The position numbers were made by a program, and so were the translations under genes. DNA of 64,000 nt from IMG/VR virus record IMGVR_UViG_3300044846_005229, positions 215,340-279,339 of that record. One strand, given 5' to 3'. This document shows, piece after piece, positions 13,761 to 48,921 of the stretch; the stretch's first letter is position 1; every line of letters begins with the position of its first letter. The notes beneath the pieces are model-generated. The model was not told where the DNA came from and searched no databases. It was given only the letters and a program-made list of their open reading frames with translations.

Positions 13761-14885
13761 CTAGCAATGATAGTGATAGAATTTTTCTATGGTATCACCA
13801 CACAAATAGTTGATTAATTCGTCATCAATCGTGTTTGGTAAAACGCACTCATTTTTCATTACGTGGTCGGCTTCGTCAAATAGTCGGTTTACAATAGAAA
13901 TAAGTTCGCTATAGGTGACCCTACCATACTTAATATCAAGAAGGAACTCTGCGTCACCGACCAATTTTCTATCTACGAATAACTTACCGGCCCGCATCCC
14001 TTCAATAGCCATTTTCATAAGCCTCACGCAATGACTAGCATTCTTACCATCATACCCACAAGCCCGTTCAATTTCAGATCGCTTGACATTTCTATTCGTC
14101 AACCAATCTTGATAGTTGCCCCATCTTTTTAGGTCTGCCCGGTATTGCTGACTGGAATGAAGCAAGGCCATGTATTCATCACTTGCCCTTGTGATTTTTT
14201 GTGTTTCGTCAAAGCATTGCGTTGGCAGAACACTCTGTTTCAGAATACCTTTCCAATCAATCTGGTTGTTAAGTAGCTCATACAGCTCTGTTGAGGGTTG
14301 ATAGTATTCAATTCTATCTTTAATCAACAGATACAAATACTCAATAAACGACTCGATCTGCGACGGTGTTAAGCTCGGTGAAGGAACTCCGTAGTCTTCC
14401 CACTCTGGTTTCCTTGTTGGTGGATCCCGCAGCCATTTACGGTGAGTTTCCATCTTTTTGATTTGAGACTTTGCATACTGGACAAATGTGCCAGAGATTC
14501 TTTTGGAGATTAGTTTTGTTCGATTGTTGATCAGGGACTGCCCAAGGTAATCAAGGTAGATATAGCTATCGGGGGTCTGCCAAAGCATCTCCAGGATGTT
14601 GGGGTTTTGCGACCGTAACAGGCTGAGGTATCGCCTGATGCCATAAACTACTGAGTCGGAATTGTCTAATTCAGGAAATCTTGTCCTAAAAGTTGGTTCC
14701 CCGTCATGCACCCACCCTTTATCCTTTTGCTCAAATGTTTCTAATGTAGTATAAAATCTCCTTGGTGCAACACAGATACCTTTAAAGTCAAGGTCTGACA
14801 TTTCAGTATTTAGGCCATAGGCGTGACTACCTGACTTACAGAATAGAATCATTCCATCTTCAATTTCCTTTCGTGTAATTGTCAT
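13761..14885 (-). CDS. predicted nucleotidyltransferase (Pol-beta superfamily, RlaP/YcgL-like)
   Basis: GSHAYGLNT..SDLDFKG, NPNILEML, GYDGKNASH.VRL. Confidence 0.88.
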   Translation of the reverse strand: MTITRKEIEDGMILFCKSGSHAYGLNTEMSDLDFKGICVAPRRFYTTLETFEQKDKGWVHDGEPTFRTRFPELDNSDSVVYGIRRYLSLLRSQNPNILEMLWQTPDSYIYLDYLGQSLINNRTKLISKRISGTFVQYAKSQIKKMETHRKWLRDPPTRKPEWEDYGVPSPSLTPSQIESFIEYLYLLIKDRIEYYQPSTELYELLNNQIDWKGILKQSVLPTQCFDETQKITRASDEYMALLHSSQQYRADLKRWGNYQDWLTNRNVKRSEIERACGYDGKNASHCVRLMKMAIEGMRAGKLFVDRKLVGDAEFLLDIKYGRVTYSELISIVNRLFDEADHVMKNECVLPNTIDDELINYLCGDTIEKFYHYHC

Positions 14886-16194: not shown

Positions 16195-16803
16195 TTAGTT
16201 TGAACCCAGAACGAACCGAGCGAATCGCTTCACAACGATGTTTTCTCCCACAGTAGCAGCGAAGTTCTTGGTATAAGTTTCGATAGTCATCGTGCCATCT
16301 TTGATATAAGGTTGGTCCATCAGGGACATTTCCTTAAAGCGTTTGGCTACACGACCTACAACAATTCTGCTACGCATTGCTTCTGGCTTTTTGGCAAGGT
16401 CTTCTTTGCCCATTTCGATTCGAGTCTCGTCCAATAGGATAGACTCAGGAATGTCGGATATTGAGACATAGCTTACAGAAGGGCACGCCGCAACTTGCAT
16501 TGCCAAAGTGCGAACGAACTCTTGGAATGGCCCAGATTTTGCCACAAAATCAGTTTCGCAATTCACTTCGATGAGTACACCGATCTTGCCACCTGTATGG
16601 ATATAACTGGATACAGTCCCTTCCAGGGTTGTACGGCCAATCTTTCCATCAGCTAAGACAATACCTTTTTGACGTAGCCAAGTGATTGCCCCGGCTTCGT
16701 CGCCTTGGGAGGCTTCCAGTGCTTCTTTGCAAAGCATCATGCCTGCCCCGGTTTTTTCACGGAGCGCTTTAATTTGTGGAATCGTGGGTTGGGTGTAAGT
16801 CAT
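16195..16803 (-). CDS. tsf: translation elongation factor Ts (short cyanobacterial type)
   Basis: IKALREKTGAGMMLCKEAL, EG.VSSYIHTGGKIGVLIEVNCETDFVA, LMDQPYIKD, GENIVVKRFARF. Confidence 0.96.
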   Translation of the reverse strand: MTYTQPTIPQIKALREKTGAGMMLCKEALEASQGDEAGAITWLRQKGIVLADGKIGRTTLEGTVSSYIHTGGKIGVLIEVNCETDFVAKSGPFQEFVRTLAMQVAACPSVSYVSISDIPESILLDETRIEMGKEDLAKKPEAMRSRIVVGRVAKRFKEMSLMDQPYIKDGTMTIETYTKNFAATVGENIVVKRFARFVLGSN

Positions 16804-26835: not shown

Positions 26836-26949
26836 CCGATAGAATTTTGCTAACCTAAGTTAACAATGCACAGGTATTAATACCTGAGGGGCTATCTCCC
26901 AAAGTCTCAAGAATTCTTGAGACGCTTTTTACCCAGATATTCCGGGCAC
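26836..26949. repeat. 114-bp exact repeat, copy 1
   Basis: identical to 42372-42485. Confidence 0.95.
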
Positions 26950-36672: not shown

Positions 36673-38692
36673 TGTGTTGTGATGTCCGGGAATTTAAAGA
36701 CGTTTTTGGAATCCATACGGATAGATTTCAGAAATTTACAATGCTTTACATATTCAATATCGAAGCTAGTTGCGTAAGCATCAATATCATTTTGATCGGC
36801 CACAAGGAGCCAACCTTCCGGGTCTATAATCCCCTTTCGTAGAGCAGCTAACCTCCACCATAGGGATGGGTGTTTTGCCATGGACATCGCCCAATGGTAT
36901 TTAATGAAGTATTCACCTTCTTCGAGACTAATTTTTTCAACTCTACCGAAACCGCCAACTGTTTTGCTACGGTCACCGACCGTAATAGAAAATGTATTTT
37001 GTGGTTCTCCGTGGGAGATGTTGTCATAGGTCAAAAAGCCAACCCCGAAGCAAGGGTTCTTAAAGTCCATAGGGCAACCTTCTGTAGTTGAAGCTAAAAC
37101 ATAGTCATCAATTTCTGGTATGGTTGTGCCTACGAGGTGTTCGTGATTCCAACTTACAGTTATCTTTTTGGCTTGATTGAGGGTTAATTTTCCTTTTTCA
37201 ATCGCACCCACTAGCTCTATTGGGAGTGAGTCAATCATTGTGGGTTCGGTCCGGGCCCCGGCCATGTAATTACTTTGCAGTTTTTGAAGCAATCTGGGTA
37301 GTTGGCCTGCATGAATTCATATGTTTTGAGACCTATGAGTAATGGTGTTCGTTCCCTAGGCATTAATGCGTGTCTTAGGATGTCCTCTTTAAGTTTTTCG
37401 AGGTCTTTGATGGGGTCTCTTTTCGGTTGTTCCCAGCTTTGATGGTTCTTACTCATTGTCAATCATTGTCAGATTGAGTGTGATTTGTTATTTGCCACAG
37501 TCAACGGTAACCTACAGCAATGTAGTCTTTCATATGCGACTCAGGGATTTCTTTTGTGGCACCATCGGCGTAAAACATGCGCTCTGCAACGAACCAACTA
37601 CCAGTGTACATTCGCGGACTTGAACGGTAAATGTGGTACAAGTTCCCGTCTCGCAGATTGCGAAAGATTGTCTCGGTACGATCACCAGACTTTCGATCTA
37701 ATTCGAAACCGAAACCTTGTTCAACCAATTGCTTGAGGGTGACTTTTAACATTTTTGATTTATTGAGGAGTTGGAAAGGTTACAATGACCCTGTCACGAC
37801 TGCTAGAATGTCTTCTTCACTTCCAAATGGGCACTTACCGTTAGCGTAAACGGAAATACGATTGTAACCTTTGTAATCATTTCTATAAGAAATTTGCCAC
37901 AAGTCACCATCCCAGCTTACCTCGTGAACGGTAATAATCCTATTGTCTCGAAGAATTAGGCGGTCCCCTGGCTTGACGATGTGGCCGTCAATGGTTACGG
38001 GGGGTGTCTGAGGTAGTCTTTTTATGTGTGTTTGCTGACATTTCGGTTGGAATCAATGCTACAACACGACGAAGCAAAGCAACCTGTTCAGAGCTGAGTC
38101 CTGTATCTCCGTCATCTAAGACGGTTGGCAGGATTTGGTTAAGTAATGCCGCTCTTTCTCGCTTCAGGGCCAGCTTAGGGTCGGGCACCCAGTCGGGGGT
38201 GTGGAGCCAAGGCAACAGGTCTGGCCTGTTTCCGTAATTCTTGAGTGCTCCGGCGTGGTTTGAAGCAACGGACGTCCAGTGCGTGTTTCTCCAGTATCCG
38301 TATTCAAGAATCTGCACCTGCCCTCGCTGGTCCCCATCCGCCTCAGTCGGTGGCGCGTTCCGGATACCATCGGTCGGCATTTGGTATTTCAATGCTTCGG
38401 CTGCCTGGGCAGCACCCCACCGGGCCCAGAAGGTTGCAGATTGAAGCTCATTGCCGTATGTTCTTGCGACATAGTTGACAAAATTCTCGGAAGCAGTGAT
38501 GCTGTTTGGATTGAATGCCATGATTGTTTTTAGATGGGCGAGGAATGGTGACAAAGCAACTATACTGCCTTCGCCCCGCAGAAACAAGCCGGGGAACCGA
38601 ACCGGGTGGGGCGGTTATCCGACTTTGCCGTGTTGGTAAAAAAGTTTTTTACCATTGCGTTCATACTTTTTGAAATTTTTCGAGTGTTAAAA

Positions 38693-38763
38693 ATCCCCTA
38701 GACAGAATTGAACTGTCGTCTCTCGCTTACAAGGCGAGTGCATCACCACAATGCTTTAGGGGC
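38693..38763 (-). tRNA. trnT: tRNA-Thr(TGT)
   Basis: CTCGC-CT-TGT-AA-GCGAG; G1.A72 mismatch. Confidence 0.85.
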
Positions 38764-38773
38764 AAGCGTTTCC

Positions 38774-38801
38774 ATTATAGCATGGCTTGGCAAAAAGTCA
38801 A
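38774..38801 (-). promoter_or_regulatory. sigma70-type promoter for tRNA-Thr
   Basis: TTGACT-16 nt-TATAAT. Confidence 0.75.
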
Positions 38802-38891
38802 TGCCCCCAAAGTCAGGGTGCCGGTTTTGACACCCCGCGCCTCTAGATTACGGACTGTAAGGGCCAATAAACGGGATGCCCCCCCTCTCTC

Positions 38892-39323
38892 CTACACCAC
38901 AACCAAGTTATCACGAACCCAATCAGATGAGTAAGAATACACCTCATCATCAATACCAATAGCAACATAGTCAGGGTGTGAGACCGTGGTATCGCCTTCC
39001 CTTGTTTTAAGGATTACGGTGACCTCAAGGGGGACGGGGACAAATTTGCACAGGGCACTGCGGCGATACATGCCAGAATTAGGCTCAGTTTCTTCCCAGG
39101 AGCCAGGAAAAATATCAACCTTACACGGGTACGGCTGTGACCCATCGACCGGCATCAGTACATAGTCAATGCCTTCGACGGCAGTTAAATCACCCCTTTC
39201 TCGGGGGAAGACTTCGGTACCGACCGTCGGGCGAATGCGGACCAGGGTTTTTCGTCTTGCAGTCAAGGGTTGCCCGAAAGCTGCGATGACTTCGGTTCCG
39301 GTTGTGAATGTAAGGGTTGTCAT
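38892..39323 (-). CDS. hypothetical protein (two-repeat PGDYG-like)
   Basis: T/E.RGD...DYV...G..Y repeated twice. Confidence 0.6.
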   Translation of the reverse strand: MTTLTFTTGTEVIAAFGQPLTARRKTLVRIRPTVGTEVFPRERGDLTAVEGIDYVLMPVDGSQPYPCKVDIFPGSWEETEPNSGMYRRSALCKFVPVPLEVTVILKTREGDTTVSHPDYVAIGIDDEVYSYSSDWVRDNLVVV

Positions 39324-39545
39324 TTTTGATGTTGGTTTGGGTGGTGGGTTTAGGTTTGGAGCTAGACGGTTAGACCCCCGTAGTTTAGCAGGCCACTAGG
39401 GCAAAGTCAAGGGTGGTTCCAGGTCCGTGAGGGAATTTGGAATGGTAACTCTTCGTCAGATTTCCTGGTATGTCGTCCCTCCTGGCAATGAGATACCGCA
39501 TCAACGCATCACAAATTGTGCTAGGGGGAACCAAACTGGGTACAA

Positions 39546-39962
39546 TCAGTTCCGATTGGTCGGAGCAGTCAGGATTGGTAACCCGCCTTGGTTGGGCGCT
39601 ACGAAATAGGTCTTGTTTCCCTTTTCCGCCCCTTCCTCAATGTGTTGAATCTGCAGGAACGTCAAATACTCAGGGTTATCCTTAAGGCTGGCACCAATAA
39701 TTTTATTGGATTCTGCGATACCTTCAGCTTCTTTGATGCGAACTTCTTTCAGCTTTTCGGCACTATCGAGTTTAGCTTGGGCTTCCAAAACTGCTACTTG
39801 GCGCGTATATTCGGCCTTTTGCAACTCGGCTTTTCCTTCCAGGGACTGCTGCCAGACTCCGTATTGGGGAAGTACAAACATTGCGGTCGCAATGATGGCC
39901 GCCAAAAGGAATGCCAGGATGCCAAAAATGACGCCGCCTGAGTAACTGTCTGAGTGCTTCAT
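39546..39962 (-). CDS. membrane-anchored SPFH/prohibitin C-terminal-like protein
   Basis: TM helix, PQYGVWQQ..EGKAEL, AEGIAESNKIIGASL..NPEYL; start reassigned to MKHSD. Confidence 0.7.
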   Translation of the reverse strand: MKHSDSYSGGVIFGILAFLLAAIIATAMFVLPQYGVWQQSLEGKAELQKAEYTRQVAVLEAQAKLDSAEKLKEVRIKEAEGIAESNKIIGASLKDNPEYLTFLQIQHIEEGAEKGNKTYFVAPNQGGLPILTAPTNRN

Positions 39963-40037
39963 GGTGCGATTGGTTGTTGGTGGTTGGTTGTTTGAGGTAG
40001 TGATTTGGCCTAATCGGGGGGGGAACCCGGTAGGCAA

Positions 40038-40113
40038 AGTTCCAGGCCGGATTCGAACCGGCGAAAATGCGAGTTTTGCAGACTCGTGCCTTAGACCACT
40101 TGGCGACTGGAAC
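40038..40113 (-). tRNA. trnC: tRNA-Cys(GCA)
   Basis: CGAGT-CT-GCA-AA-ACTCG, U73. Confidence 0.93.
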
Positions 40114-40836
40114 ATTCGATTGTATTATAGGGTGCCCAATGGGCGAGTAAACCGATTAGACTCGGATCGTGTTGAAGCCATTCTCAAAACCGTCACCGTA
40201 CCCTTGGCTATAGGCTTTTGTGTCGATTATTCTGCACCACTCCAGGAAGTGTTCGAGAGATAAGTCCCCAGCGGCTACTGTTTCAAAGATCTCAGTGGCT
40301 GTGGGATAGACCACAAACAGTTCGTCAAAGGTTTTCATAGTTGTTGATCTGTAGAATGGTTCTTTTGTTGGAGTCTACGTGCTTTCCTAGCAAACCTTTT
40401 CCAAATTTGTTTGGCGACTTTCGTAGGAAAGTCTCTCATCTCCCTAAGGTATCGGCTCTGATTTCGACTTACTGGTTTTGCCATTTCTCTTCAAGAAAAT
40501 CGGTGTCTTGCTGAGTTATCTTGTGAAGCCTTTCGTAAAATTGTTCTAACTTTTGATCGACCTCTTCTCTGTCTACTGTCATTGGCATGTTCAAGCGGGC
40601 GTCTTCTAATGATGACAAGGCATCACGAACTAAAGTTTTGAGGGACCCTACTTGTTTTCCAAGATGGTGCATCTCGTCTCGCTGCTGTTCTAGGGGGGGG
40701 GGGTCAATGTTTGCCATTGTGTTGGGAATTTGAAGCCGTGGATACTATAGCACCTTACACAGGGTAAGGCAAGCCCCGGAACTGGCCTAGACAGGGAGGC
40801 AAACCACCCTTAACCAATTTGTAGACTCCCATGGTT

Positions 40837-41202
40837 TCAGAGTTGGGAAAGAGTAAGCCCCAAGTAGCAAAATTGATGAAGGAGCTGATCAAAACCGATC
40901 AAAACCCAAAAAGCTTTGTCAGTAGTGGACATTCCAAGCTTTAGGGTGATATTCTGCTTTGACCAATCGATGTGGTAGTGGAGCATACCGTCAATGGCCC
41001 CTAAAACTAGGGCCACACTTGGCAGAAAAGGAAAGGTAACCAGCACTGTTGCCAATGCGTGTTTTATCGAGTGTTGGATTCCAATTGGATGCAAGTAAGT
41101 GCCTTTATGCTTCACTTCGTCTTCCGTTTGTAGACACCAATCTACCGCGAAGTGTTTAATAAGGAGTAATGAAAGCAAGGCTAAGGCTTTTTGAGGGTCC
41201 AT
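40837..41202 (-). CDS. DUF3307 membrane protein
   Basis: KHFAVDWCLQ, HSIKH, HYHIDWSK, IGFDQLLH. Confidence 0.85.
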   Translation of the reverse strand: MDPQKALALLSLLLIKHFAVDWCLQTEDEVKHKGTYLHPIGIQHSIKHALATVLVTFPFLPSVALVLGAIDGMLHYHIDWSKQNITLKLGMSTTDKAFWVLIGFDQLLHQFCYLGLTLSQL

Positions 41203-41250
41203 GGGAACTTGTAAGGCAAGTTTACAACTTGGGTGCGTATCTTAGTGTAA

Positions 41251-41322
41251 TGGGGGATATCGGGCTTGAACCGATGGCGGCCTGTTTGTAGGACAGGTGC
41301 TCTACCACTGAGCTAATCCCCC
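41251..41322 (-). tRNA. trnV: tRNA-Val(TAC)
   Basis: CCTGT-CC-TAC-AA-ACAGG. Confidence 0.88.
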
Positions 41323-41703
41323 AATAAAGACCAACGATGACCACCCCTACTTCAGTCCAAGACAATAAAAACGGAATTTTGTATCACATTGGGGCCGAAA
41401 TACACGGAACCTTCCTCAGTTACACAAAAGTAGTACTTAAGATCCTCCAAGTTAGTAGTCAGCATTTCTTCGAGCGCTTTCCTTTGGGACTCTGAGAAGG
41501 GTTGCTCCACAGAGACAAAAGTTCCAAGAGGGGTGATTGCTTTGATTTTCATGATTGGGTGGGTAGGGTTCAGGGAGCAAGTTGAGGGGGAATTCAACTT
41601 TGTTTTCCATGGGCCAATCATAGCGTTTCTGCGCGGCAGAAACAAGGGAGAGAACCGAACCGGATAGCACGGTAGACCGACCCTCCCTAGAGCAGTGACC
41701 GCC

Positions 41704-42303
41704 TTAGATAGCAACCGGTGTAAATACTCCATAGTATGCCCTGCCATAACAGCCGGATTCAGCCAACGTAGTAACACGACCTGTCTGCCCTATCCACCCA
41801 TTAAGAGCATCTTCGGTAAGTTCATGGGGGTGGCCATCATGAGCAGGAATGTCGATCCACTCGAAAATTCTAAAAATCGGTGCAGCTTTTAGGGCGTTAT
41901 GAACGATTTTGGCAGGGTCTACCGTATGTTGTAAACAGTTATACATCCATACCTCATCCCACCCCGTGTCTTCAATATCCTCACCCATCGAAACTGAAAC
42001 TGAGACGTTATTACTCGCGTATCGATCAACGGTCCATTTAGGGTAGGATACCGGGTCTACGACTTTGCCTTCAGTTAAGTTGATGGTTTTAAGCAAAAGG
42101 CTGCTGGGACCACCACCGATATCAAGGATTCTTTTGCCCCCCACATCAAAACTATAATGGGTCCGATGCAATCCCATTAATCTCCCGTAGACGAATTGCT
42201 TCTGTTCCTCGTCAAAGGTATTGCAGCAGTTACCCCAGTATGACCTTTCAAAGTCGTAGTCGTTGCTGCGATCGTTATGGTTGCCGTAGTCGTTATGGCT
42301 CAT
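41704..42303 (-). CDS. class I SAM-dependent methyltransferase-like protein
   Basis: KRILDIGGGP, VVDP, DEVWMYNCLQHTVDP. Confidence 0.8.
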   Translation of the reverse strand: MSHNDYGNHNDRSNDYDFERSYWGNCCNTFDEEQKQFVYGRLMGLHRTHYSFDVGGKRILDIGGGPSSLLLKTINLTEGKVVDPVSYPKWTVDRYASNNVSVSVSMGEDIEDTGWDEVWMYNCLQHTVDPAKIVHNALKAAPIFRIFEWIDIPAHDGHPHELTEDALNGWIGQTGRVTTLAESGCYGRAYYGVFTPVAI

Positions 42304-42343
42304 TTCAGTGGGTTAAATTTGTGATATTTGCGCCAGCAAATTA

Positions 42344-42575
42344 TGGCGGACCGGAGAATTGAACTCCTATTCCGATAGAATTTTGCTAACCTAAGTTAAC
42401 AATGCACAGGTATTAATACCTGAGGGGCTATCTCCCAAAGTCTCAAGAATTCTTGAGACGCTTTTTACCCAGATATTCCGGGCACCATGTTGGCAGTAGA
42501 TGCTAAGCTACTGGCCTTAGTATTAAAACTGAGGACTTAGACCTGTGCGTCTTACCTGGATTTCTCCAACCCGCA
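42344..42575 (-). ncRNA. expanded tRNA-like RNA A
   Basis: GCGGGTT/GGTCCGC acceptor, GGAG-TTCAATT-CTCC T-arm, about 190-nt structured interior with GCACAGGT/ACCTGTGC helix. Confidence 0.6.
42372..42485. repeat. 114-bp exact repeat, copy 2
   Basis: identical to 26836-26949. Confidence 0.95.
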
Positions 42576-42606
42576 GTGAGGTAATGAACTGAAGAAGCAA
42601 CCTTCA

Positions 42607-42723
42607 GACTTAAGGGAACCTTAAGATTTGAGTTATGGCCAGAAGGTCATACAAGATGGTTGGGTTTCTATAGCAAAGAAATTTGTAAATTGCTGAACCA
42701 TCTTAGTTTTGTGCTAGCAAAAC
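42607..42723 (-). ncRNA. CAGCAA hairpin RNA motif, copy 1
   Basis: AAGATGGTT-CAGCAAT...TTTCT-TTGCTAT-AGAAA...AACCATCTT; similar to 43144-43262. Confidence 0.65.
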
Positions 42724-42724
42724 A

Positions 42725-42796
42725 TGGCGGAAGCTGGATTTGCACCAGCGATCTTCAGGGTATGAGCCTGACGAGATTCTACTTCTCTACTCCGCG
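42725..42796 (-). tRNA. trnM: tRNA-Met(CAT), initiator-like
   Basis: TCAGG-CT-CAT-AC-CCTGA, C1 unpaired. Confidence 0.85.
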
Positions 42797-42824
42797 TTAT
42801 TGTACCGTGTGTTAATTACGGTAA

Positions 42825-42895
42825 TCGGGATGGAAGGTACTGCCCCTTCTATTCTGCTTCCCAAAAGCAGTGTGATACTTTTCTACTACACCCCG
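42825..42895 (-). tRNA. trnP: tRNA-Pro(TGG), atypical T-loop
   Basis: CTGCT-TT-TGG-GA-AGCAG; C1-G72, A73; T-loop GGCAGTA. Confidence 0.8.
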
Positions 42896-42919
42896 ATGTC
42901 TACCTAATGTTACCCTTCC

Positions 42920-42973
42920 GGTTCCATGCCCATGCTTGCAAAACAGGTGCCCCCCCAATTGAGCTATGACCCC
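42920..42973 (-). pseudogene. degenerate tRNA-Ala(TGC), 3' half lost
   Basis: GGGGTCATAGCTCAATTGG...CCTGT-TT-TGC-AA with no T-arm or 3' acceptor strand. Confidence 0.65.
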
Positions 42974-42977
42974 GTGT

Positions 42978-43118
42978 TCATCTAATGCTTTCTAACATAT
43001 AGGTTTTACCCTTGAGTGTGACAGTGAGCGAAGGGTTAGCTATGGCAGCAGCCAGTTGCTTCCTTGCCTTAGGGTCGTTTAATATCCCCTTAATTAACCT
43101 GGTTGGTTCTACTTTCAT
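42978..43118 (-). CDS. 46 aa ORF inside tRNA array
   Basis: own translation MKVEPTRLIKGILNDPKARKQLAAAIANPSLTVTLKGKTYMLESIR*. Confidence 0.45.
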   Translation of the reverse strand: MKVEPTRLIKGILNDPKARKQLAAAIANPSLTVTLKGKTYMLESIR

Positions 43119-43143
43119 TTTATCAGGGTTTGTGTGGCCATCC

Positions 43144-43262
43144 GACTTGAGGGAACTTTAAGATTTGAGTTATGGCCAAAAAGTCATACAAGATGGTTGT
43201 TTTTTCTACCAAAAAGAAAGTTTTTAGATTGCTGAACCATCTTAGTTTTGCTATCGCAAAAC
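43144..43262 (-). ncRNA. CAGCAA hairpin RNA motif, copy 2
   Basis: AAGATGGTT-CAGCAAT...TTTCT-TTTTGGT-AGAAA...AACCATCTT. Confidence 0.65.
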
Positions 43263-43264
43263 AA

Positions 43265-43341
43265 CCGGAAATCGCAGAATCGAACTGCGGACCTCTCGTT
43301 TTTCAGACGAGCGCTCTTCACCAAGACTGAGCTAATTCCCG
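43265..43341 (-). tRNA. trnF: tRNA-Phe(GAA)
   Basis: CTCGT-CT-GAA-AA-ACGAG. Confidence 0.9.
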
Positions 43342-43402
43342 TTTTTTACCCGGGTTTGATCTCCCGGTAGTTATTACCCCCAGACTTTCACCTGAGGGCA
43401 AA

Positions 43403-43474
43403 TTGAACGCACGGGACTCGAACCCGCATCCTCCACCAACCCGGTGGCGCTCTACCACTTGGAGCTAACGTCCA
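43403..43474 (-). tRNA. tRNA-like gene with shrunken anticodon loop (isotype undetermined)
   Basis: intact acceptor, D and T arms; CCACC-GGGTT-GGTGG has only a 5-nt loop. Confidence 0.65.
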
Positions 43475-43609
43475 AATCCCTTTGAATAAACCTGCAAGTT
43501 ACTTTTAAGGGCCGGGTATTACAATTGCAGTTGCTTTCCCCTCGGGACTTTCACCCGTATATGCAACTCTGTTAATTCGTGGTTGCTAACGATTTCCCGT
43601 TTCCGGAAA

Positions 43610-43680
43610 CGGGGTATAGGGGACTCGAACCCCCCTTTGCGAGTAGACAGCCCGCAGCCTTCCCTGACGGCAAATACCCT
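43610..43680 (-). tRNA. trnD: tRNA-Asp(GTC)
   Basis: GCGGG-CT-GTC-TA-CTCGC, G73; A1.C72 mismatch. Confidence 0.8.
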
Positions 43681-43746
43681 ATTTGCCCCTGCCCTGGCTC
43701 ACTTGCTTGTTCCGAAGAACCGCACTAGCAAACCTGCTGGAGGCAA

Positions 43747-43819
43747 CACCCAATGAGGGAGTCGAACCCCCGTATTCTAATTCGTAGCCAGACGCTTTAA
43801 TCCACTAAGCTAATTGGGC
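43747..43819 (-). tRNA. trnR: tRNA-Arg(ACG)
   Basis: TCTGG-CT-ACG-AA-TTAGA. Confidence 0.9.
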
Positions 43820-43874
43820 AGTTTTCTGCCGAAAACTTTCAGAGTGTTCTCGTAAGTTTCTCGTTAGAGAAACA

Positions 43875-43955
43875 TGGCCCCCAAGGGACTTGAACCCTTA
43901 CAGCTTTCGCTGGGAGTTTTTAAGACTCCTGTGTCTACCCTTCCACCAGAAGGCC
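43875..43955 (-). tRNA. trnL: tRNA-Leu(TAA), second divergent copy
   Basis: GGAGT-CT-TAA-AA-ACTCC, long variable arm. Confidence 0.9.
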
Positions 43956-44014
43956 ATTTGGTGTTAAATTTTCAAGTTGCTGGTTGAGAGTTTTGACTCT
44001 GCCAACCTGTCACT

Positions 44015-44058
44015 ATTATAGCGTCTCTGCGGGCAGAGACAAGGGCGGTTAACCGAAC
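44015..44058 (-). promoter_or_regulatory. promoter with upstream CGGTTAACCG palindrome
   Basis: GTTCGGTTAACCGCCC-TTGTCT-16-TATAAT. Confidence 0.7.
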
Positions 44059-44128
44059 GTTTGCTGAGCAAACGACACCGGAGAGATGGCCCCCCGAGAT
44101 TTATCTTAAGTTTCCTCGTCAGAGAAAA

Positions 44129-44200
44129 AGCGGGTAGGGGTAGTCGAAACCCCGTCTACTGCTTGGAAGGCAGTCATATTGGCCGTTATACGATACCCGC
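44129..44200 (-). tRNA. trnG: tRNA-Gly(TCC)
   Basis: ACTGC-CT-TCC-AA-GCAGT, U73. Confidence 0.9.
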
Positions 44201-44240
44201 ATTTTGTATGTTGCTTCGGTAATGTTTACGTCAGCAAAAG

Positions 44241-44313
44241 GGTGATGAACGGGAATCGGACCCGCGCTAGTCTGGCTCACAACCAGATGCCTTACCACTT
44301 GGCTACCACCACC
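44241..44313 (-). tRNA. trnH: tRNA-His(GTG) with encoded G-1
   Basis: TCTGG-TT-GTG-AG-CCAGA; G-1/C73. Confidence 0.9.
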
Positions 44314-44411
44314 ATGGTGCCCTAGGTTTGTATCCAACGGTAATGAAACTTTAAGGTGATGGTCTCCCATTTCCACCCTAAGTCATATTACCCAGACTCA
44401 ACCGTAAGCAA

Positions 44412-44567
44412 TGCCCCAACCAGGGGTTCGAACCTGGAGGCAAAAGAATCTATTTTCAATAAGAAGGTTTGATTTCAAGGCCACACCTTATCAACGTAGG
44501 TTCAATACGCCTATCAGCATTTACTCGTAGATTTGAACCCTGATGCCTGTTCCAACTACTTTGGGAC
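44412..44567 (-). ncRNA. expanded tRNA-like RNA B
   Basis: GTCCCAA/TTGGGGC-A acceptor, CCAGG-TTCGAAC T-arm, interior closed by AGGCA/TGCCT with GGTTCAA/TTGAACC and further hairpins. Confidence 0.6.
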
Positions 44568-44604
44568 TTTTTTCGTGTTTTGAACATTCCTAACAAAGTT
44601 AGGC

Positions 44605-44671
44605 TAGATGATTGTTTTTCCAATTTCGAAGGAGTTGATCGCTGAATCATCTAAGTTTGCAACTGCAAAAC
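44605..44671 (-). ncRNA. CAGCAA hairpin RNA motif, copy 3 (divergent)
   Basis: AGATGATT-CAGCGAT...AATCATCT, compensatory change versus copies 1-2. Confidence 0.55.
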
Positions 44672-44680
44672 AATGGCAAA

Positions 44681-44761
44681 TGCCCACCGGGGGACTCGAA
44701 CCCCCACGCCTTTCGGCACATGGGCCTAAACCATGCGTGACTTCCATTCCACCAGGCAGGC
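44681..44761 (-). tRNA. trnL: tRNA-Leu(TAG)
   Basis: CATGG-TT-TAG-GC-CCATG, long variable arm. Confidence 0.9.
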
Positions 44762-44792
44762 TTTTTTCTAGGGGTTTTTCAAAGAAAAACAT

Positions 44793-44948
44793 TGAAGTGG
44801 AGAGGCTTGAACTCTCAATGTTAAGATTGCGTCTGGCTGCTACTTAACAGGTGGTTTCAACCATGAGCCAGGAAGTTGCTATTAGCATTTACAACCCCAT
44901 CCGTATCGGCTGATTCCACACCCCCGTATACCAGTTCCGGCACACTTC
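44793..44948 (-). ncRNA. expanded tRNA-like RNA C
   Basis: GAAGTG/CACTTC acceptor, type-II D-arm CCG-GAACTGGTATA-CGG, T-arm GAGAG-TTCAAGC-CTCTC, extended anticodon and variable arms. Confidence 0.7.
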
Positions 44949-44967
44949 TTCTTTCCTTAGAAAGAAA

Positions 44968-45048
44968 CTGGAGCGGAAGGACTCGAACCTTCATTGTCTT
45001 TCGACACTCGTTAACAGCGAGTTGCATTTCCAATTATGCTACACCCCA
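44968..45048 (-). tRNA. trnN: tRNA-Asn(GTT) with long variable arm
   Basis: ACTCG-CT-GTT-AA-CGAGT then GTC-GAAA-GAC; G73. Confidence 0.85.
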
Positions 45049-45209
45049 TTACACCCTGCGTTACGGCAGGGGACAGTAGGAAACACTCTGGGGTCGCATT
45101 GCGTCCCGGTGTGAGTACGAATCGTTACTTAAACCGGTTATTACTGACCCTTAGCTGCAAACCGGAAACCTGTGCTAAAGGACTTTTTCCTTTCCCGTTA
45201 GGGAAAGAA

Positions 45210-45283
45210 TGGGAGCGGTCGGGATCGAACCGACGACCTATCGGTTATCAACCGAGTGCTCTAGACCGCTGAGCTACGCTCCC
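45210..45283 (-). tRNA. trnI: tRNA-Ile(GAT)
   Basis: TCGG-TT-GAT-AA-CCGA. Confidence 0.9.
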
Positions 45284-45489
45284 TTGGTGTTAAATTGTCT
45301 AGTTTCTGTCAATGGCGTAACCAGTGGCGTTACTACCAGCGACACCCTTAGTATAGGGTCTTGCCCCGGTAAAGTAAAGGACGGTTTGCCGCCCCCACCT
45401 TACGGACTTTTTCGCGTTTTTCGCTTAGCGAAAGTTGCCTTGCGATTAAACCTTACCAGGGTTAGCTGGTGGGTTAATCTTAGAGCAAA

Positions 45490-45616
45490 TTGACTACCGA
45501 GGACTTGCACCTCGACCCCCTCTGTCCAAAACTACTCGCAGGTACGGAACTTGGCCTTCGTTCTATCTTACTGCTTTCGCCCAAAGGGACATGCTGACTT
45601 CTAACACTCGTAGTCA
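45490..45616 (-). ncRNA. expanded tRNA-like RNA D
   Basis: TGACTAC/GTAGTCA acceptor, D-like arm, TGTCC/GGACA anticodon stem enclosing about 60 nt, T-arm CGAGG-TGCAAGT-CCTCG. Confidence 0.7.
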
Positions 45617-45778
45617 AAGTCCATTTTACGTCAGGGCGGACACACCCCGTTTGCCTTTGGAAAACCAAAGATTTAACCTACCTAGATTTACCCTCTTACA
45701 CGATAACTCGTTTTGATGCAATCTCCCGATCTGCAGAGGCAAAGTAGGCTAGCCCCGTGGATTAATCCCATAGGGCCA

Positions 45779-45852
45779 TACTCTAGAAGGGATTCGAACC
45801 CTCGATTTCCTGCTTGAAAGGCAGGCGACTTAGACCGCTTGTCCACTAGAGC
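45779..45852 (-). tRNA. trnE: tRNA-Glu(TTC)
   Basis: CCTGC-CT-TTC-AA-GCAGG. Confidence 0.92.
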
Positions 45853-45943
45853 CTATGCCGCATTGCTCCGGATACCGGAGTTACGGCTTTTGGCAATTAG
45901 GTTGTCAAGTTGCGTTGCTCGGGGTTGTGTCCCTTACCTCTGT

Positions 45944-45989
45944 ATTATAGGTTGCTGGCCCTGGCAAGTAAAGGGCGGTTAACCGAACC
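45944..45989 (-). promoter_or_regulatory. promoter with upstream CGGTTAACCG palindrome heading tRNA array
   Basis: GGTTCGGTTAACCGCCC-TTTACT-17-TATAAT. Confidence 0.7.
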
Positions 45990-46159
45990 TTGCGCATGGG
46001 GAAAATTTCGGGAGGGGGCGTAAGCCCCCGACCTGGGACGGGCGCCGTAGGCGATTGCCCGGACCCAACACCACCCAGCATCATGGCGCCAAGGGTAATA
46101 CCCACTGATGCCACAACCTTCCAGGTATTATACCCCCCCCTATAATCAGCATTATACTA

Positions 46160-46933
46160 CTAAGCAACAAAATCCCCTAGCTGAATCCTGCCCTCCGGCA
46201 CCCATTCTTTGACAATGGCCCTAATTATGGGCTTATTCGGTCTATACTGGGGGGGAATATCCGACATGTCCAAACTCTCGGGTCCAACCAAAACCCGTTG
46301 ACGCTTAATGTAGGTCCCATGGGTGAATGCCCTAGGGAGTTCTTCCCATGGTTTCCCTATTTGTTTCAGCAAGGTTTTCATTTCTTCGCAAGTTACCCCT
46401 TGAAGGTCCTTATGTGAAAATAAACTCTGGGCATACATTGACACTGAGTTTTTCGTAGCGTCATTGAGCCTCCATAGGAAGTTCTTATAGACGTATTCCA
46501 AATTAGGGACATTCCATACCCTGCAGTCAAATACGGGGTACTGGCCTACCTTTTCAGGGAGATATTCAGGTAAGTTTCCTGTGAAAAATGCCCCCGCTGT
46601 CGAGGCCAGTATTGATGTCAGCTTCTGGTATTTGCCCCTAAATAGAAATTCCCTATTGGAGTAATTCCGCTTGTCAAGATGCCAATACAAAGTTATCTCA
46701 TCGGATTGGCAATACCCTAGTAAAGCCTCACTTTCGGTAACAAGGTGCCTTGTGGTAGCAACCATTAGGTTAACGAATCGCTCATCAAACGGCTTTTGGA
46801 GGTTATGGGTAAACGAACTAAAGGTCCTCCCATCGATGCGGCACATTAAAGGGCGGAAGGGATTTGCAGTCCTGCCTGCCTCTTTTTGCTCTTGTTCTTT
46901 TAGGGTGTCGCCCAGGGTGTCAGTGTGTGGCAT
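46160..46933 (-). CDS. Thg1-like protein (tRNA-His guanylyltransferase / 3'-5' polymerase family)
   Basis: RIDGRTFSSFT..LQKPFD, YCQSDEITL, FRGKYQKLTS, FDCRV, WRLNDA.KNSV. Confidence 0.92.
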   Translation of the reverse strand: MPHTDTLGDTLKEQEQKEAGRTANPFRPLMCRIDGRTFSSFTHNLQKPFDERFVNLMVATTRHLVTESEALLGYCQSDEITLYWHLDKRNYSNREFLFRGKYQKLTSILASTAGAFFTGNLPEYLPEKVGQYPVFDCRVWNVPNLEYVYKNFLWRLNDATKNSVSMYAQSLFSHKDLQGVTCEEMKTLLKQIGKPWEELPRAFTHGTYIKRQRVLVGPESLDMSDIPPQYRPNKPIIRAIVKEWVPEGRIQLGDFVA

Positions 46934-47793
46934 TTTGTTTTGCTGTGAGTTTTTCTATGGTTGGCTGGTATTAGTAATTTGTATCTTAGGTTAATTTCAA
47001 CGTTAAAGGATATGTACATTGTGCGGTTTAAGGTTGGTTGCTAGAGAGACTTGCTGTTGAAAAAATAACGTTGTCTTGAGAAGGTTTGAGTTTCATGTAT
47101 ACCCTAGTGAGAAACTCCTGGGGTTCAGTGGGGTTGTTCCAGTATATGGGTTTGTACTCGTTATAGATCAAGTCGCCCCGTGAGTGGAATCTAACGTACC
47201 TCTCAAGAATCTCAAAATTAAAATTAAAATAACTGGATAGGATTTCCTCCCCGTCTTGTTCTCTGACTTTCAGTTTGCGGTCTCTTCGAATGTAGTACAC
47301 CAAATAATCACTCTTTCGGGTGAAAAGCCTGCGAAGAAACCCGGAATCTCTAAACTCAAATGCCACTTCATAATTGTAACGGTCGAAGTTGAAATTGCTG
47401 AGGCTTACGTTTATCATTTTTATCCCCTACGAATAATATTTAAGATAGCCCACATCATCGTAGGCCTTAAACCAATCCCTCACCCAGAGTTCAGGGTTTT
47501 CCTGGTTTTCTGGCACCATTACGTTGAGTAAGCCACCCCTCAGTAATGCCCTACCATACACCCCCCCAACATAAGCCCAAGCGTGTCTTGGATCCCCCTT
47601 AAGCATAGCATGGAGCTTATCCACGGCTTTCTCTAGGTTGACGCAACCACGTCTGTAGCAAGGTTTCATTTCTTCTTGAGTCACGTATTTTAGAAATAAA
47701 TCTGAAGCATTGGCAAAGGTTTCAGGGTCCATGTTGCTATTTTAGCATGGGTATCGGCAAGCTGTCAAAAAAAGGGGGGGCAAGGGCCCCAAC

Positions 47794-48921
47794 TTAAAAT
47801 CCCCCCTTCTCAGTCTCCCTGAGGGCCACTCCGACCGGGAAAATCGGGACACCACTTGCACTCAGTTCTTGATACCGGACTGTAAGGTACTTTGTTGTTG
47901 ACAATATGTCCTCACGATTTTCGTAAAGAGACCTGCGGTATTCCATATCGCCTTCTGGCACGACAGTAAAGGTTTCAGTCTCAGTGGCTTTACATACAAA
48001 GATCGAAGCACTTTTGAACCGGCCACCCCCTTCGATAATGTCAAGGACTTCAAACTCACCGTCCACGAAATCCTTCACCTTTTGCAACTGGTTGTTCCGG
48101 TGTCCGATATCATACCCGCCAAGGTCGAACCTGACCATCGAACCCTCGTACCCGGAGTCAACGAATTGACTGTGGTGAAAAATAACGTCAGATGGGGACT
48201 CCACCTCGGCAGTAGGGGTTAGTATAATGTGTGATTCTCCCAAGGGAACCAGACTCTTCAAAATTTCAAACCGTTCGGAGAAAGGTCTCGAAGGATCAAC
48301 AATGTCGTAGACCCAGTATACAAGCGTGGGGGACAACTCGGGACGAAACTTCTTGATCGCAGTCATTGTCTTTTGTAACAGAGGGTTTCCCGGCAGAATG
48401 AGTTCCCCGTCCAGGATCACCCCTGGTGGCAATTTTCTGATTTCCTCTTTAATATGTGCGATACACTCCGGAATAATCAACTTGCCACCGCGAGACCACC
48501 CCCCACTATTGTCGAGTAGCATCCGTTGTCCGTTCAGTTTAGGTTGCACGAATGCGGGCCAGGTTACCTTGTGGCCACGGTCCGAAAACTTATGGGCTAG
48601 CATTGGTAAGGGCAAAACCTCGGGCTCCTGCCCGATTTCAGCATATCCTTTATCAATTTGCTTTTTAAAGTCGCGCTCAATTTCTAGGTGGGCTTGTTGC
48701 TCCGCTGTGGTTGCGTTGGCCCGTCCGACATTTTTGGGATACACACAGTAAGGATCACTAAATTGCAAGGCTGAGCTTGAGCCATCATTATTTGTTTGCC
48801 AATAGGACGATTGTGTAAACCACCTATCCACGCTACTAAAAAGGACGTGCCCTTGCCAGAACTTGGCTTTACCGGTGCGGGTTGTTGACTGGAGGACTGG
48901 GGTGCTGTGTACGATTTTCAT
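47794..48921 (-). CDS. ATP-dependent DNA ligase with WGR-like N-terminal domain
   Basis: PMLA, QPKLNGQR (motif I), LDGEL, YDIV, EGSMVR, LQKVK, TVRYQELS..GVPIFP. Confidence 0.92.
   Translation of the reverse strand: MKIVHSTPVLQSTTRTGKAKFWQGHVLFSSVDRWFTQSSYWQTNNDGSSSALQFSDPYCVYPKNVGRANATTAEQQAHLEIERDFKKQIDKGYAEIGQEPEVLPLPMLAHKFSDRGHKVTWPAFVQPKLNGQRMLLDNSGGWSRGGKLIIPECIAHIKEEIRKLPPGVILDGELILPGNPLLQKTMTAIKKFRPELSPTLVYWVYDIVDPSRPFSERFEILKSLVPLGESHIILTPTAEVESPSDVIFHHSQFVDSGYEGSMVRFDLGGYDIGHRNNQLQKVKDFVDGEFEVLDIIEGGGRFKSASIFVCKATETETFTVVPEGDMEYRRSLYENREDILSTTKYLTVRYQELSASGVPIFPVGVALRETEKGGF

What the first reader, a model, noticed from the sequence alone, without database searches (positions are those of the whole stretch)
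42344..45616. Family of four 'expanded' tRNA-shaped RNAs lacking a normal anticodon arm
Seen: 42344-42575, 44412-44567, 44793-44948 and 45490-45616 each have a 6-7 bp acceptor stem stacked on a T-arm; two also have clear D-arms. The anticodon region is replaced by roughly 60-190 nt of unrelated, internally paired sequence. They are interspersed with and co-oriented to real tRNAs, so RNase P and 3' nucleases could release them. The inserts are too short for group I introns and show no tmRNA tag. Inference: an undescribed class of phage ncRNAs using a tRNA elbow as processing/stability scaffold for cargo domains, as decoys for tRNA-targeting defences, EF-Tu or synthetase binders, or Y-RNA-like adaptors. 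This is the best candidate for a new system in the window.
Basis: partly seen in the sequence, partly recalled or inferred. Interest (0 to 1): 0.88.

Follow-up and report, generated by a model that had tools for sequence, protein, structure and literature searches.

The report
tRNA-framed small RNAs in phage tRNA operons
A large cyanophage-like phage carries, between its real tRNA genes, RNAs that keep the top half of a tRNA but have a conserved foreign domain where the anticodon arm should be. Two are conserved, phage-only RNA families of unknown function, resembling the unexplained "species 1" RNA of phage T4.

Summary
All four loci (minus strand) have an acceptor stem stacked on a T arm and no normal anticodon arm. 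ARAGORN and Rfam call none of them. They are not one homologous family.

- **C (44793-44949)** has 13 distinct homologues, including one in an unannotated gap of Synechococcus phage S-CRM01. 96% of cells pair and 23 of 39 pairs show compensatory changes. It looks like a class II tRNA. A covarying pseudoknot links the insert to the long variable-arm loop.
- **D (45490-45616)** has 6 homologues. 99% of cells pair and 6 pairs are compensatory. It has a long arm with a loop-E-like internal loop and an invariant tip.
- **B (44412-44567)** occurs only in four near-identical phages, so it is unproven.
- **A (42344-42575)** is a chimera. The 3' end of a tRNA-Met(CAU) gene and a 40-nt tRNA-like 5' end flank a copy of a dispersed structured repeat.

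Every C and D copy lies in a tRNA array, co-oriented with the tRNAs. Conservation stops at the acceptor-stem ends, and the insert is more conserved than the tRNA frame.

Best reading: natural tRNA-scaffolded stable RNAs released by tRNA-processing enzymes. Their partner is unknown. The closest precedent is T4 RNA C, so this is a new variant of a known kind.

The parts
44793..44949 (-). RNA C: class II tRNA-like RNA. Features: acceptor stem 44949-44943 with 44799-44793; D stem 44940-44938 with 44926-44924; anticodon-position stem Pa 44921-44916 with 44854-44850; hairpin H1 44898-44872; pseudoknot strand 44871-44866 pairing with 44838-44833 in the loop of hairpin H2 (44848-44820, at the variable-arm position); alternative hairpin Pb 44863-44852; T arm 44816-44800.
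   Evidence: 13 distinct homologues (A9). 96.4% of cells paired; 23 of 39 pairs have compensatory change, against 4-7 in slid controls. The pseudoknot pair splits A-U 7 / G-C 6. Model R2 hits class II tRNAs as its best non-family matches.
45490..45616 (-). RNA D: tRNA-like RNA with an extended arm. Features: acceptor stem 45616-45610 with 45497-45491; D-like arm 45607-45591; 8-bp stem 45589-45582 with 45524-45517; internal loop with GAA opposite AGUA (loop-E-like, my reading); 4-bp stem 45574-45571 with 45541-45538; invariant tip 45570-45542; T arm 45514-45498; discriminator A at 45490.
   Evidence: 6 homologues (A10). 99.4% of cells paired; 6 compensatory pairs, against 0 in slid controls. 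The minimum-energy fold gives the same cloverleaf-like shape. Model R1 hits ordinary tRNAs with the middle deleted.
44412..44567 (-). RNA B: acceptor stem 44567-44561 with 44419-44413; T arm 44437-44420 (8-nt loop); discriminator A at 44412. Candidate helices: 44512-44508 with 44442-44438; 44544-44540 with 44517-44513; 44539-44533 with 44505-44499 (pseudoknotted).
   Evidence: Found only in four closely related contigs at about 90-95% identity. One candidate helix shows one compensatory change, one wobble and one mismatch. No independent support.
42344..42575 (-). Locus A, a chimera: a tRNA-like 5' segment of about 40 nt (42574-42535; acceptor 5' strand 42574-42568), a diverged 5' part of repeat R (about 42534-42486), the R core (42485-42372), then T arm 42367-42353 and acceptor 3' strand 42352-42346.
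   Evidence: The last 48 nt plus the downstream flank match the 3' part of an intact tRNA-Met(CAU) in relative L055. 114 nt are identical to window 26836-26949. The fold prefers a 13-bp terminal helix, z -4.45. Full-length A occurs in only three near-identical contigs.
26836..26949 (-). Second, free-standing copy of the repeat R core, lying between two tRNA-Leu genes.
   Evidence: Exact 114-nt identity with 42372-42485. Further copies lie at other sites in related contigs, with compensatory changes in two hairpins.
45944..45972 (-). Sigma-70-like promoter upstream of tRNA-Glu and D.
   Evidence: 10 of 12 consensus matches. This is a consensus match only.
45350..45378 (-). Sigma-70-like promoter upstream of tRNA-Ile, tRNA-Asn, C, tRNA-Leu, B, tRNA-His and tRNA-Gly.
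   Evidence: 9 of 12 consensus matches. This is a consensus match only.
46160..46933 (-). Context gene: Thg1-like 3'-5' nucleotidyltransferase immediately upstream of the tRNA array.
   Evidence: PF04446, E 2e-27. Homologues in related phages lie near tRNA arrays, CCA-adding-type nucleotidyltransferase genes and ligase genes.

Best explanation
The four loci are tRNA-derived genes in which the tRNA 'top half' (acceptor stem, T arm, usually a D arm) is kept and the anticodon arm is replaced by another RNA domain. They are transcribed as part of the phage's minus-strand tRNA operons.

Inferred maturation: the tRNA frame lets the tRNA-processing machinery cut them out. RNase P would make the 5' end, 3' nucleases the 3' end, and CCA would be added, since none of them encodes CCA. 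The frame would also protect them from decay. The result would be discrete stable RNAs of about 125-230 nt. This is how engineered tRNA scaffolds behave in E. coli.

The working part is the insert. In C it is a pseudoknotted domain tied to the long variable arm, possibly with two alternative pairings. In D it is a long arm with a loop-E-like internal loop and an invariant tip. I infer that each insert binds a specific partner, most likely a protein of translation, tRNA metabolism or RNA repair, or a host factor that acts on tRNA. The partner is unknown.

C and D are two separate, conserved, phage-restricted RNA families. B is probably a young third example. A is most likely a tRNA-Met gene rebuilt around a dispersed structured repeat, and it may or may not be functional.
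For: Shown:
- Exact tRNA-like ends, and no ARAGORN or Rfam call.
- C: 13 distinct homologues, 96.4% paired, 23 of 39 pairs compensatory against 4-7 in slid controls, and a covarying pseudoknot.
- D: 6 homologues, 99.4% paired, 6 compensatory pairs against 0.
- Every one of the 15 C loci and 5 D loci examined lies in a tRNA array with 100% of its tRNAs on the same strand. C usually sits between tRNA-Asn and tRNA-Val, and D lies downstream of tRNA-Glu.
- Mean column identity falls at the acceptor-stem ends: C 0.79 inside against 0.42 and 0.52 in the flanks; D 0.90 against 0.47 and 0.45.
- The insert is more conserved than the tRNA frame: C 0.82 against 0.74; D 0.94 against 0.85.
- Models of C and D hit class II and class I tRNAs respectively with the centre deleted.
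- Promoter-like sites lie upstream of the operons, not next to the elements.
- Neither family was found in 185,579 bacterial and archaeal genomes by pattern search.

By analogy:
- T4 RNA C lies in the T4 tRNA cluster and has a T arm on an acceptor-like stem.
- tRNA scaffolds with the anticodon arm replaced are recognised by cellular factors and used to produce RNAs in E. coli (PMC3753655).
Against: - No expression data exist. Transcription, processing, CCA addition and stability are all inferred.
- No partner is identified. No complementary target occurs in the window.
- C has only 6 clean acceptor pairs in the window, and some homologues (S-CRM01, L072) have only 4-5, which could weaken RNase P recognition (helix 1 is 90% paired).
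- B has an 8-nt T loop and no diverged homologues. A has a weak T stem and a competing 13-bp helix.
- D is missing from two of the closest relatives, so it is dispensable.
- The homologues came from pattern searches built on conserved motifs, so the apparent invariance of those motifs is partly circular.
Confidence: 0.7

Rival explanations
1. They are intron-containing tRNA genes. The insert is removed by self-splicing or by phage ligase and nuclease, and an ordinary decoding tRNA results.
For: The inserts sit where tRNA introns sit. C keeps a 5-bp stem at the anticodon-stem position, and in some homologues the first insert bases resemble the 5' side of an anticodon loop (my reading of A9). 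The phage encodes ligase and Thg1-like enzymes. ARAGORN at lowered thresholds models D as tRNA-Ser with a 54-nt intron.
Against: No group I, group II or small-ribozyme match at E<=5. The inserts (about 60-190 nt) are shorter than known group I introns (my knowledge). The putative anticodon and position 33 are not conserved across C homologues. In D no anticodon loop can be assembled. The inserts are more conserved than the frames, and C's insert pairs with the variable-arm loop.
Confidence: 0.05
2. They are decaying or disrupted tRNA genes (insertion scars, recombination products) with no function of their own.
For: A holds a copy of a dispersed repeat, and in a close relative the same site has an intact tRNA-Met. 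The array also holds degenerate tRNAs (42825-42895 is Rfam-only; a fragment lies near 42900-42975). B is lineage-restricted. D is absent from two close relatives.
Against: For C and D this is excluded by compensatory covariation in both the frame and the insert, across phages whose neighbouring Thg1-like proteins are only about 65-70% identical, and by inserts that are more conserved than flanks.
Confidence: 0.15
3. They are chargeable tRNA mimics. With CCA added, one or more is aminoacylated and used outside normal decoding. For example, C could be charged by LeuRS, which in E. coli relies on A73 and the tRNA core rather than the anticodon (my knowledge). Alternatively they titrate a synthetase or EF-Tu.
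For: C has a class II architecture and its model's best non-family hits are tRNA-Leu and tRNA-Ser. The base after the acceptor stem is A in B, C and D. The phage also encodes EF-Ts and a tmRNA.
Against: No G3-U70 pair and no tag reading frame. The terminal acceptor pairs of C are poorly conserved. No identity element was tested.
Confidence: 0.07
4. They are Y-RNA-like partners of an RNA quality-control or repair machine (Ro60/Rsr type), as YrlA is.
For: [quoted passage not shown] The window encodes an RlaP-family RNA-repair nucleotidyltransferase, a Thg1-like protein and a ligase. The window's D contains a string that fits the YrlA motif GNCGAAN0-1G.
Against: No RF02553 match at E<=5. No TROVE or Ro60 domain among the 36 window proteins scanned. 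That motif is not kept in the other D homologues. In YrlA the RNA ends lie in the Ro-binding stem (per the paper and my knowledge), whereas here they lie in the acceptor stem, which is the opposite topology.
Confidence: 0.04

Closest known systems
Phage T4 RNA C (species 1 RNA) and RNA D (species 2), small stable RNAs of the T4 tRNA gene cluster
   Same: Encoded inside a phage tRNA cluster and co-oriented with the tRNAs. They are 119-139 nt long. RNA C folds with a canonical T arm stacked on an acceptor-like stem, a long arm and a second hairpin before the T arm, and no anticodon arm. Their function is unknown (PMC3014915, PMC9697503). They have no Rfam family.
   Different: No sequence similarity to A-D. 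RNA C's acceptor-like stem has two U-U mismatches, and I saw no D arm. RNA D shows no tRNA-like fold. The host and phage group differ.
Engineered 'tRNA scaffold' for recombinant RNA expression in E. coli (Ponchon and Dardel; PMC3753655)
   Same: Acceptor stem, T arm and D arm are kept and the anticodon stem-loop is replaced by a structured cargo. The frame is recognised by cellular factors. This is the same architecture as C and D.
   Different: It is artificial. The natural RNAs have conserved cargo that in C also pairs with the variable arm.
YrlA / bacterial Y RNAs (RF02553)
   Same: Non-coding RNAs with a tRNA-like module (T arm, D arm). They are substrates of tRNA enzymes, present in some phages, and linked to RNA repair loci.
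   Different: No model match, no Ro60 gene seen, and opposite topology of the ends.
tmRNA
   Same: A tRNA-like acceptor/T-arm domain joined to pseudoknotted non-tRNA sequence. The window has its own permuted cyanobacterial-type tmRNA at 10582-10844.
   Different: No tmRNA model match at A-D. No tag reading frame, no G3-U70 pair, and they are much smaller.

Membership tests
Canonical tRNA (RF00005) | Acceptor stem of 7 bp stacked on a 5-bp T stem with a 7-nt T loop | tested here: met
   Met fully by D. C has 6-7 bp, B has an 8-nt T loop, and A has a 4-bp T stem.
Canonical tRNA (RF00005) | 5-bp anticodon stem closing a 7-nt loop with U33 and an anticodon | tested here: not met
   No ARAGORN or RF00005 call. 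The loop is replaced by about 60-190 nt, and candidate anticodon bases are not conserved in C.
tRNA with group I intron | Match to the group I intron model; exons that rebuild an anticodon loop | tested here: not met
   No intron or ribozyme family at E<=5 in 38000-47000. No conserved anticodon halves.
tmRNA | Match to tmRNA models; tag reading frame | tested here: not met
   The only tmRNA hit in the window is at 10582-10844. There is none at A-D.
YrlA / Y RNA | Match to RF02553 | tested here: not met
   No hit at E<=5.
YrlA / Y RNA | Ro60/Rsr gene nearby on the same strand | tested here: inconclusive
   No TROVE domain among the 36 window proteins scanned. The rest of the 279-kb genome was not examined.
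T4-type stable RNAs of phage tRNA clusters (RNA C) | Encoded within, and co-oriented with, a phage tRNA gene cluster | tested here: met
   for A-D and all homologues; for T4.
T4-type stable RNAs of phage tRNA clusters (RNA C) | T arm on an acceptor-like stem, no anticodon arm, about 120-140 nt or more | tested here: met
   compared.
T4-type stable RNAs of phage tRNA clusters (RNA C) | Sequence or model homology to T4 rnaC/rnaD | tested here: not met
   nhmmer and models R1 and R2 hit only T4 tRNAs, not rnaC or rnaD.
T4-type stable RNAs of phage tRNA clusters (RNA C) | Accumulates as a discrete stable RNA processed from the tRNA precursor | not testable with these tools
   Needs RNA from infected cells.

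The most novel reading that the evidence does not exclude
Freshwater cyanophage-like phages may carry a whole, uncatalogued class of tRNA-scaffolded regulatory RNAs. These would arise repeatedly from tRNA genes (C, D, B, plus the 'E' type and the L002 elements in relatives). Their conserved cargo domains would act in trans on host translation, on tRNA-targeting defence, or on the phage's own RNA-repair enzymes. C might work as a two-state switch: one 3' strand has two alternative partners, and both changed together in one lineage.
Probability: 0.3. Interest if true: 0.8.

Novelty: new variant of a known kind. Interest (0 to 1): 0.6.

Why it matters
Phage tRNA arrays are usually read only as codon-supply or anti-defence tRNA sets, and the gaps between tRNAs are ignored. 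Here two such gaps hold RNA families with strong covariation. They are absent from Rfam and, by pattern search, from bacterial genomes. One of them sits in a cultured phage (S-CRM01), where it is not annotated.

They give the 50-year-old puzzle of T4 RNA C and RNA D a comparative footing. The same design, a tRNA frame plus cargo, has evolved repeatedly, which argues that the design itself is useful to phages. They also show that nature uses the 'tRNA scaffold' trick that was invented for RNA production.

If a partner is found, it could reveal a new way for phages to manipulate translation or tRNA-directed immunity.

Tried and rejected
- **Rfam:** gathering and E<=5 searches gave nothing at A-D.
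- **ARAGORN with introns:** mostly chimeras of neighbouring tRNAs, and only a weak call for D.
- **Hammerhead-like string in C:** rejected by eye because the core G is missing.
- **Alternative pairing of the 5' AGCC segment of C with the pseudoknot strand:** rejected by eye on A2 and A9, because mismatches appear where the pseudoknot partner covaries.
- **Thermodynamic z-scores:** uninformative for B, C and D. One of my own shuffle scripts timed out.
- **Antisense targets:** complements of the invariant C and D segments have no target in the window.
- **B homologue hunt:** blastn against phages, nhmmer on all loci and a two-block pattern scan found only near-identical copies.
- **A's 5' part:** no convincing similarity to tRNA-Tyr or other neighbours.
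- **Pattern-scan false positives:** 6 of 16 metagenome hits and all 3 genome hits to the C pattern were chance matches in GC-rich DNA.
- **D's 21-mer:** absent from genome contigs.
- **YrlA motif in D:** not conserved in the homologues.
- **Literature:** searches on S-CRM01, cyanophage non-coding RNAs and viral structured-RNA surveys found no description of these families. I could not check the supplementary catalogue of 10,006 viral candidates.
- **Not done:** a third covariance model, for B.

Full report
**1. What is at the coordinates**

The window carries a minus-strand tRNA array from about 38.6 to 45.9 kb. ARAGORN finds 17 tRNAs in the window, 15 of them in this array, and Rfam finds one more. 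The four reported intervals lie in gaps of that array on the same strand, and their ends are exact.

- D (45616 to 45490) starts with a 7-nt strand that pairs perfectly with the 7 nt immediately after a 5-bp T stem carrying a 7-nt T loop.
- C (44949/44948 to 44793) has 6-7 acceptor pairs, a canonical T arm, a 3-bp D stem and a GG-containing D loop.
- B (44567 to 44412) has 7 acceptor pairs and a 5-bp T stem, but its T loop has 8 nt.
- A (42574 to 42345) has an acceptor stem with three G-U pairs and a 4-bp T stem. The minimum-energy fold merges these into a 13-bp terminal helix.

None is called by ARAGORN or by any of 4227 Rfam models, even at E<=5.

**2. Setting**

The window comes from a 279-kb viral contig (IMGVR_UViG_3300044846_005229). 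Several findings point to a freshwater cyanophage-like jumbo phage:
- A relative carries psbA.
- The window's tmRNA is of the permuted cyanobacterial type.
- One family is shared with Synechococcus phage S-CRM01.

The gene directly upstream of the array is a Thg1-like 3'-5' nucleotidyltransferase. An ATP-dependent ligase follows it. The window also encodes an RlaP-family RNA-repair nucleotidyltransferase and EF-Ts. Relatives have a CCA-adding-type enzyme, and one also has an RNA ligase and a cyclic phosphodiesterase, near the same gene.

Sigma-70-like promoter matches on the minus strand lie at 45972-45944, 45378-45350 and 44042-44015. D would therefore be transcribed with tRNA-Glu. C and B would be transcribed with tRNA-Ile, Asn, Leu, His and Gly. 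This is a consensus match only.

**3. C is a conserved RNA family**

A blastn search found 83% identity between the core of C and an unannotated 376-nt gap between tRNA-Val and tRNA-Ala of S-CRM01. Pattern scans of viral and metagenome contigs, filtered with nhmmer, gave 13 distinct sequences.

I read a structure off the alignment with seven helices:
- acceptor stem,
- D stem,
- a 5-bp stem at the anticodon-stem position (Pa),
- hairpin H1,
- hairpin H2 at the variable-arm position,
- T arm,
- a 6-bp pseudoknot between the strand after H1 and the 17-nt loop of H2.

On this structure 96.4% of cells pair. 23 of 39 pairs carry changes on both sides, against 4-7 when the partners are slid by 1-3 columns. 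No shuffle in 500 reaches any measure. The pseudoknot covaries: one pair is A-U in 7 sequences and G-C in 6.

The 3' strand of Pa can instead form a small hairpin, Pb, with the segment just upstream. Both alternatives fit the data. In the one lineage where that strand changed (L002), both possible partners changed with it. This hints at a switch, but it rests on a single event.

A covariance model of C has class II tRNAs as its best non-family hits (Leu and Ser, including those of T4). C therefore looks like a class II tRNA whose anticodon loop was replaced by about 60 nt.

**4. D is a second, unrelated family**

I fetched contigs that encode homologues of the Thg1-like protein (65-90% identity). 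This brought in diverged arrays and D homologues in L059, L063 and L064. A 21-mer scan added L069 and a partial copy, L068. L068 lies on the same 277-kb contig as a C homologue.

The structure is: 7-bp acceptor stem, D-like arm, an 8-bp stem at the anticodon-stem position, an internal loop, a 4-bp stem, an invariant tip of about 29 nt containing a 4-bp hairpin, a 2-nt variable region, and the T arm. On this structure 99.4% of cells pair, with 6 pairs changed on both sides against none in the slid controls. The internal loop has GAA opposite AGUA, the signature of a loop-E / sarcin-ricin motif. That reading is my own, from the sequence, and is untested. The D model hits ordinary tRNAs with its central 73 positions deleted.

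**5. What C and D share**

- All 15 C loci and 5 D loci examined lie in tRNA arrays in which every tRNA is on the same strand.
- Column identity drops at the acceptor-stem ends: C 0.79 inside against 0.42 and 0.52 outside; D 0.90 against 0.47 and 0.45.
- The inserts are more conserved than the tRNA frames: C 0.82 against 0.74; D 0.94 against 0.85.
- Neither family was found in the 185,579-genome collection by pattern. The three pattern hits for C there were chance matches.

**6. B**

B occurs in the window's contig and three close relatives at about 90-95% identity, with a variable central stretch. One candidate helix next to the T arm shows one compensatory change, one wobble and one mismatch. 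A 7-bp pseudoknot-type pairing never varies. By my own estimate, an acceptor match of this quality within 400 nt has about a 0.1 chance. B is a plausible third example but is not demonstrated.

**7. A**

A 114-nt stretch inside A (42372-42485) is identical to 26836-26949, which lies between two tRNA-Leu genes. This repeat, R, has a core of about 113 nt and a full form of about 165 nt. It occurs at different sites in at least seven related contigs. Two of its hairpins covary in the most diverged copies.

The last 48 nt of A, with the downstream flank, match the 3' part of an intact tRNA-Met(CAU) at the corresponding place in relative L055. A is therefore a tRNA-Met locus whose 5' two-thirds were replaced by a 40-nt tRNA-like head and an R copy. 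It is conserved only among near-identical contigs. It could be a scaffolded copy of R or a scar.

**8. Not one family, but a recurring design**

nhmmer finds no similarity among A-D. Relatives hold further examples:
- An 'E' type in L057 and L059 has a 7-bp stem plus a 30-nt hairpin in the anticodon position. A short form in L064 is called tRNA-??? by ARAGORN.
- L002 has two unannotated tRNA-like elements next to its C homologue.

The design seems to arise repeatedly from tRNA genes.

**9. How it most likely works**

Shown: tRNA-like frames under purifying selection, conserved cargo, operon position, and restriction to phages.

Inferred: co-transcription with tRNAs; 5' cleavage by RNase P; 3' trimming and CCA addition, since none of the four encodes CCA; and stabilisation by the tRNA fold. 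Engineered tRNA scaffolds behave this way in E. coli (PMC3753655). M. smegmatis YrlA is likewise cleaved by RNase P and receives CCA (PMC4201824).

The cargo then binds a partner. The invariant single-stranded stretches and the loop-E-like motif suggest a protein or a structured RNA rather than simple antisense. No complementary site exists in the window. Which partner is unknown. Translation factors, tRNA enzymes, the phage RNA-repair set or host tRNA-directed defences are the candidates. I cannot rank them.

**10. Rivals**

- Spliced tRNAs are unlikely. There is no intron model, no conserved anticodon, and the insert is better conserved than the frame.
- Pseudogenes are excluded for C and D by covariation, but remain open for A and partly for B.
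- Chargeable mimics and Y-RNA-like partners are not excluded, but no tested feature supports them.

**11. Comparison with what is known**

The nearest precedent is T4 RNA C (species 1), together with RNA D. They are encoded in the T4 tRNA cluster. RNA C folds with a T arm on an acceptor-like stem and has two arms instead of an anticodon arm. Their role is still unknown, and they have no Rfam family. There is no sequence or model homology between them and A-D.

C and D are therefore new families of a kind that has been known but not understood since the 1970s (the dating is my knowledge). I found no paper describing them.

**12. Limits**

- There are no transcript data.
- The homologue sets were gathered with motif patterns, which biases them toward conserved motifs.
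- The D alignment is shallow, with low divergence.
- Structures were derived from the same alignments on which they were counted. The slid controls and the many double changes reduce that concern for C.

Noticed in passing
window 26836-26949 and 42372-42485; L087, L089, L090, L091, L093, L094, L095: A dispersed, highly conserved structured repeat 'R' (core about 113 nt, full form about 165 nt) sits at different sites in related phage contigs, usually in or near tRNA arrays. Two of its hairpins covary. It has no Rfam match. It may be a mobile or independently functional RNA module.
   Followed up: partly
window 42601-42724, 43138-43263, 44590-44673 (minus strand): A repeat of about 125 nt lies immediately downstream of tRNA-Met, tRNA-Phe and tRNA-Leu(tag). 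It contains a long hairpin. Its function is unknown.
   Followed up: no
window 10582-10844 (-): A permuted, cyanobacterial-type tmRNA gene is encoded by the phage (Rfam RF01851, 72.8 bits).
   Followed up: no
window 16195-16803 (-), 13761-14885 (-), 46160-46933 (-), 47794-48921 (-): The phage encodes EF-Ts, an RlaP-family RNA-repair nucleotidyltransferase, a Thg1-like enzyme and an ATP-dependent ligase. Together these form a translation and tRNA-repair toolkit around the arrays. NAD-synthesis genes (NadA, NAPRTase family, PRPP synthetase-like) are also present.
   Followed up: partly
window 42825-42895 (-) and about 42900-42975 (-): There is a degenerate tRNA (Rfam only; Pro UGG-like with an odd T loop). 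Next to it is a tRNA-Cys-like 5' fragment without a T arm. This shows tRNA gene decay inside the array.
   Followed up: no
L057:14412-14535, L059:14762-14870, L064:13956-14050: Another expanded tRNA-like type ('E') lies downstream of tRNA-Glu in relatives. It has a 7-bp stem plus a hairpin of about 30 nt at the anticodon position. L064 has a short form that ARAGORN calls tRNA-???.
   Followed up: partly
L002:3369-3496 and L002:3969-4137 (-): Two unannotated tRNA-like elements (about 108 and 150 nt) lie next to the C homologue and tRNA-Tyr. Their acceptor stems resemble that of tRNA-Tyr, which suggests duplication and expansion.
   Followed up: no
L083:526-610 (-); L054:11215-11290 (+): ARAGORN calls a suppressor-type tRNA (anticodon UUA, 'tRNA-Stop') next to a C homologue in L083. 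L054 has an uncalled tRNA-like gene with a similar anticodon-loop string.
   Followed up: no
window 44863-44850 and 44921-44916 (RNA C): One 3' strand can pair with two different 5' partners (Pa or Pb). In homologue L002 both partners changed together with it, which suggests two alternative conformations.
   Followed up: partly
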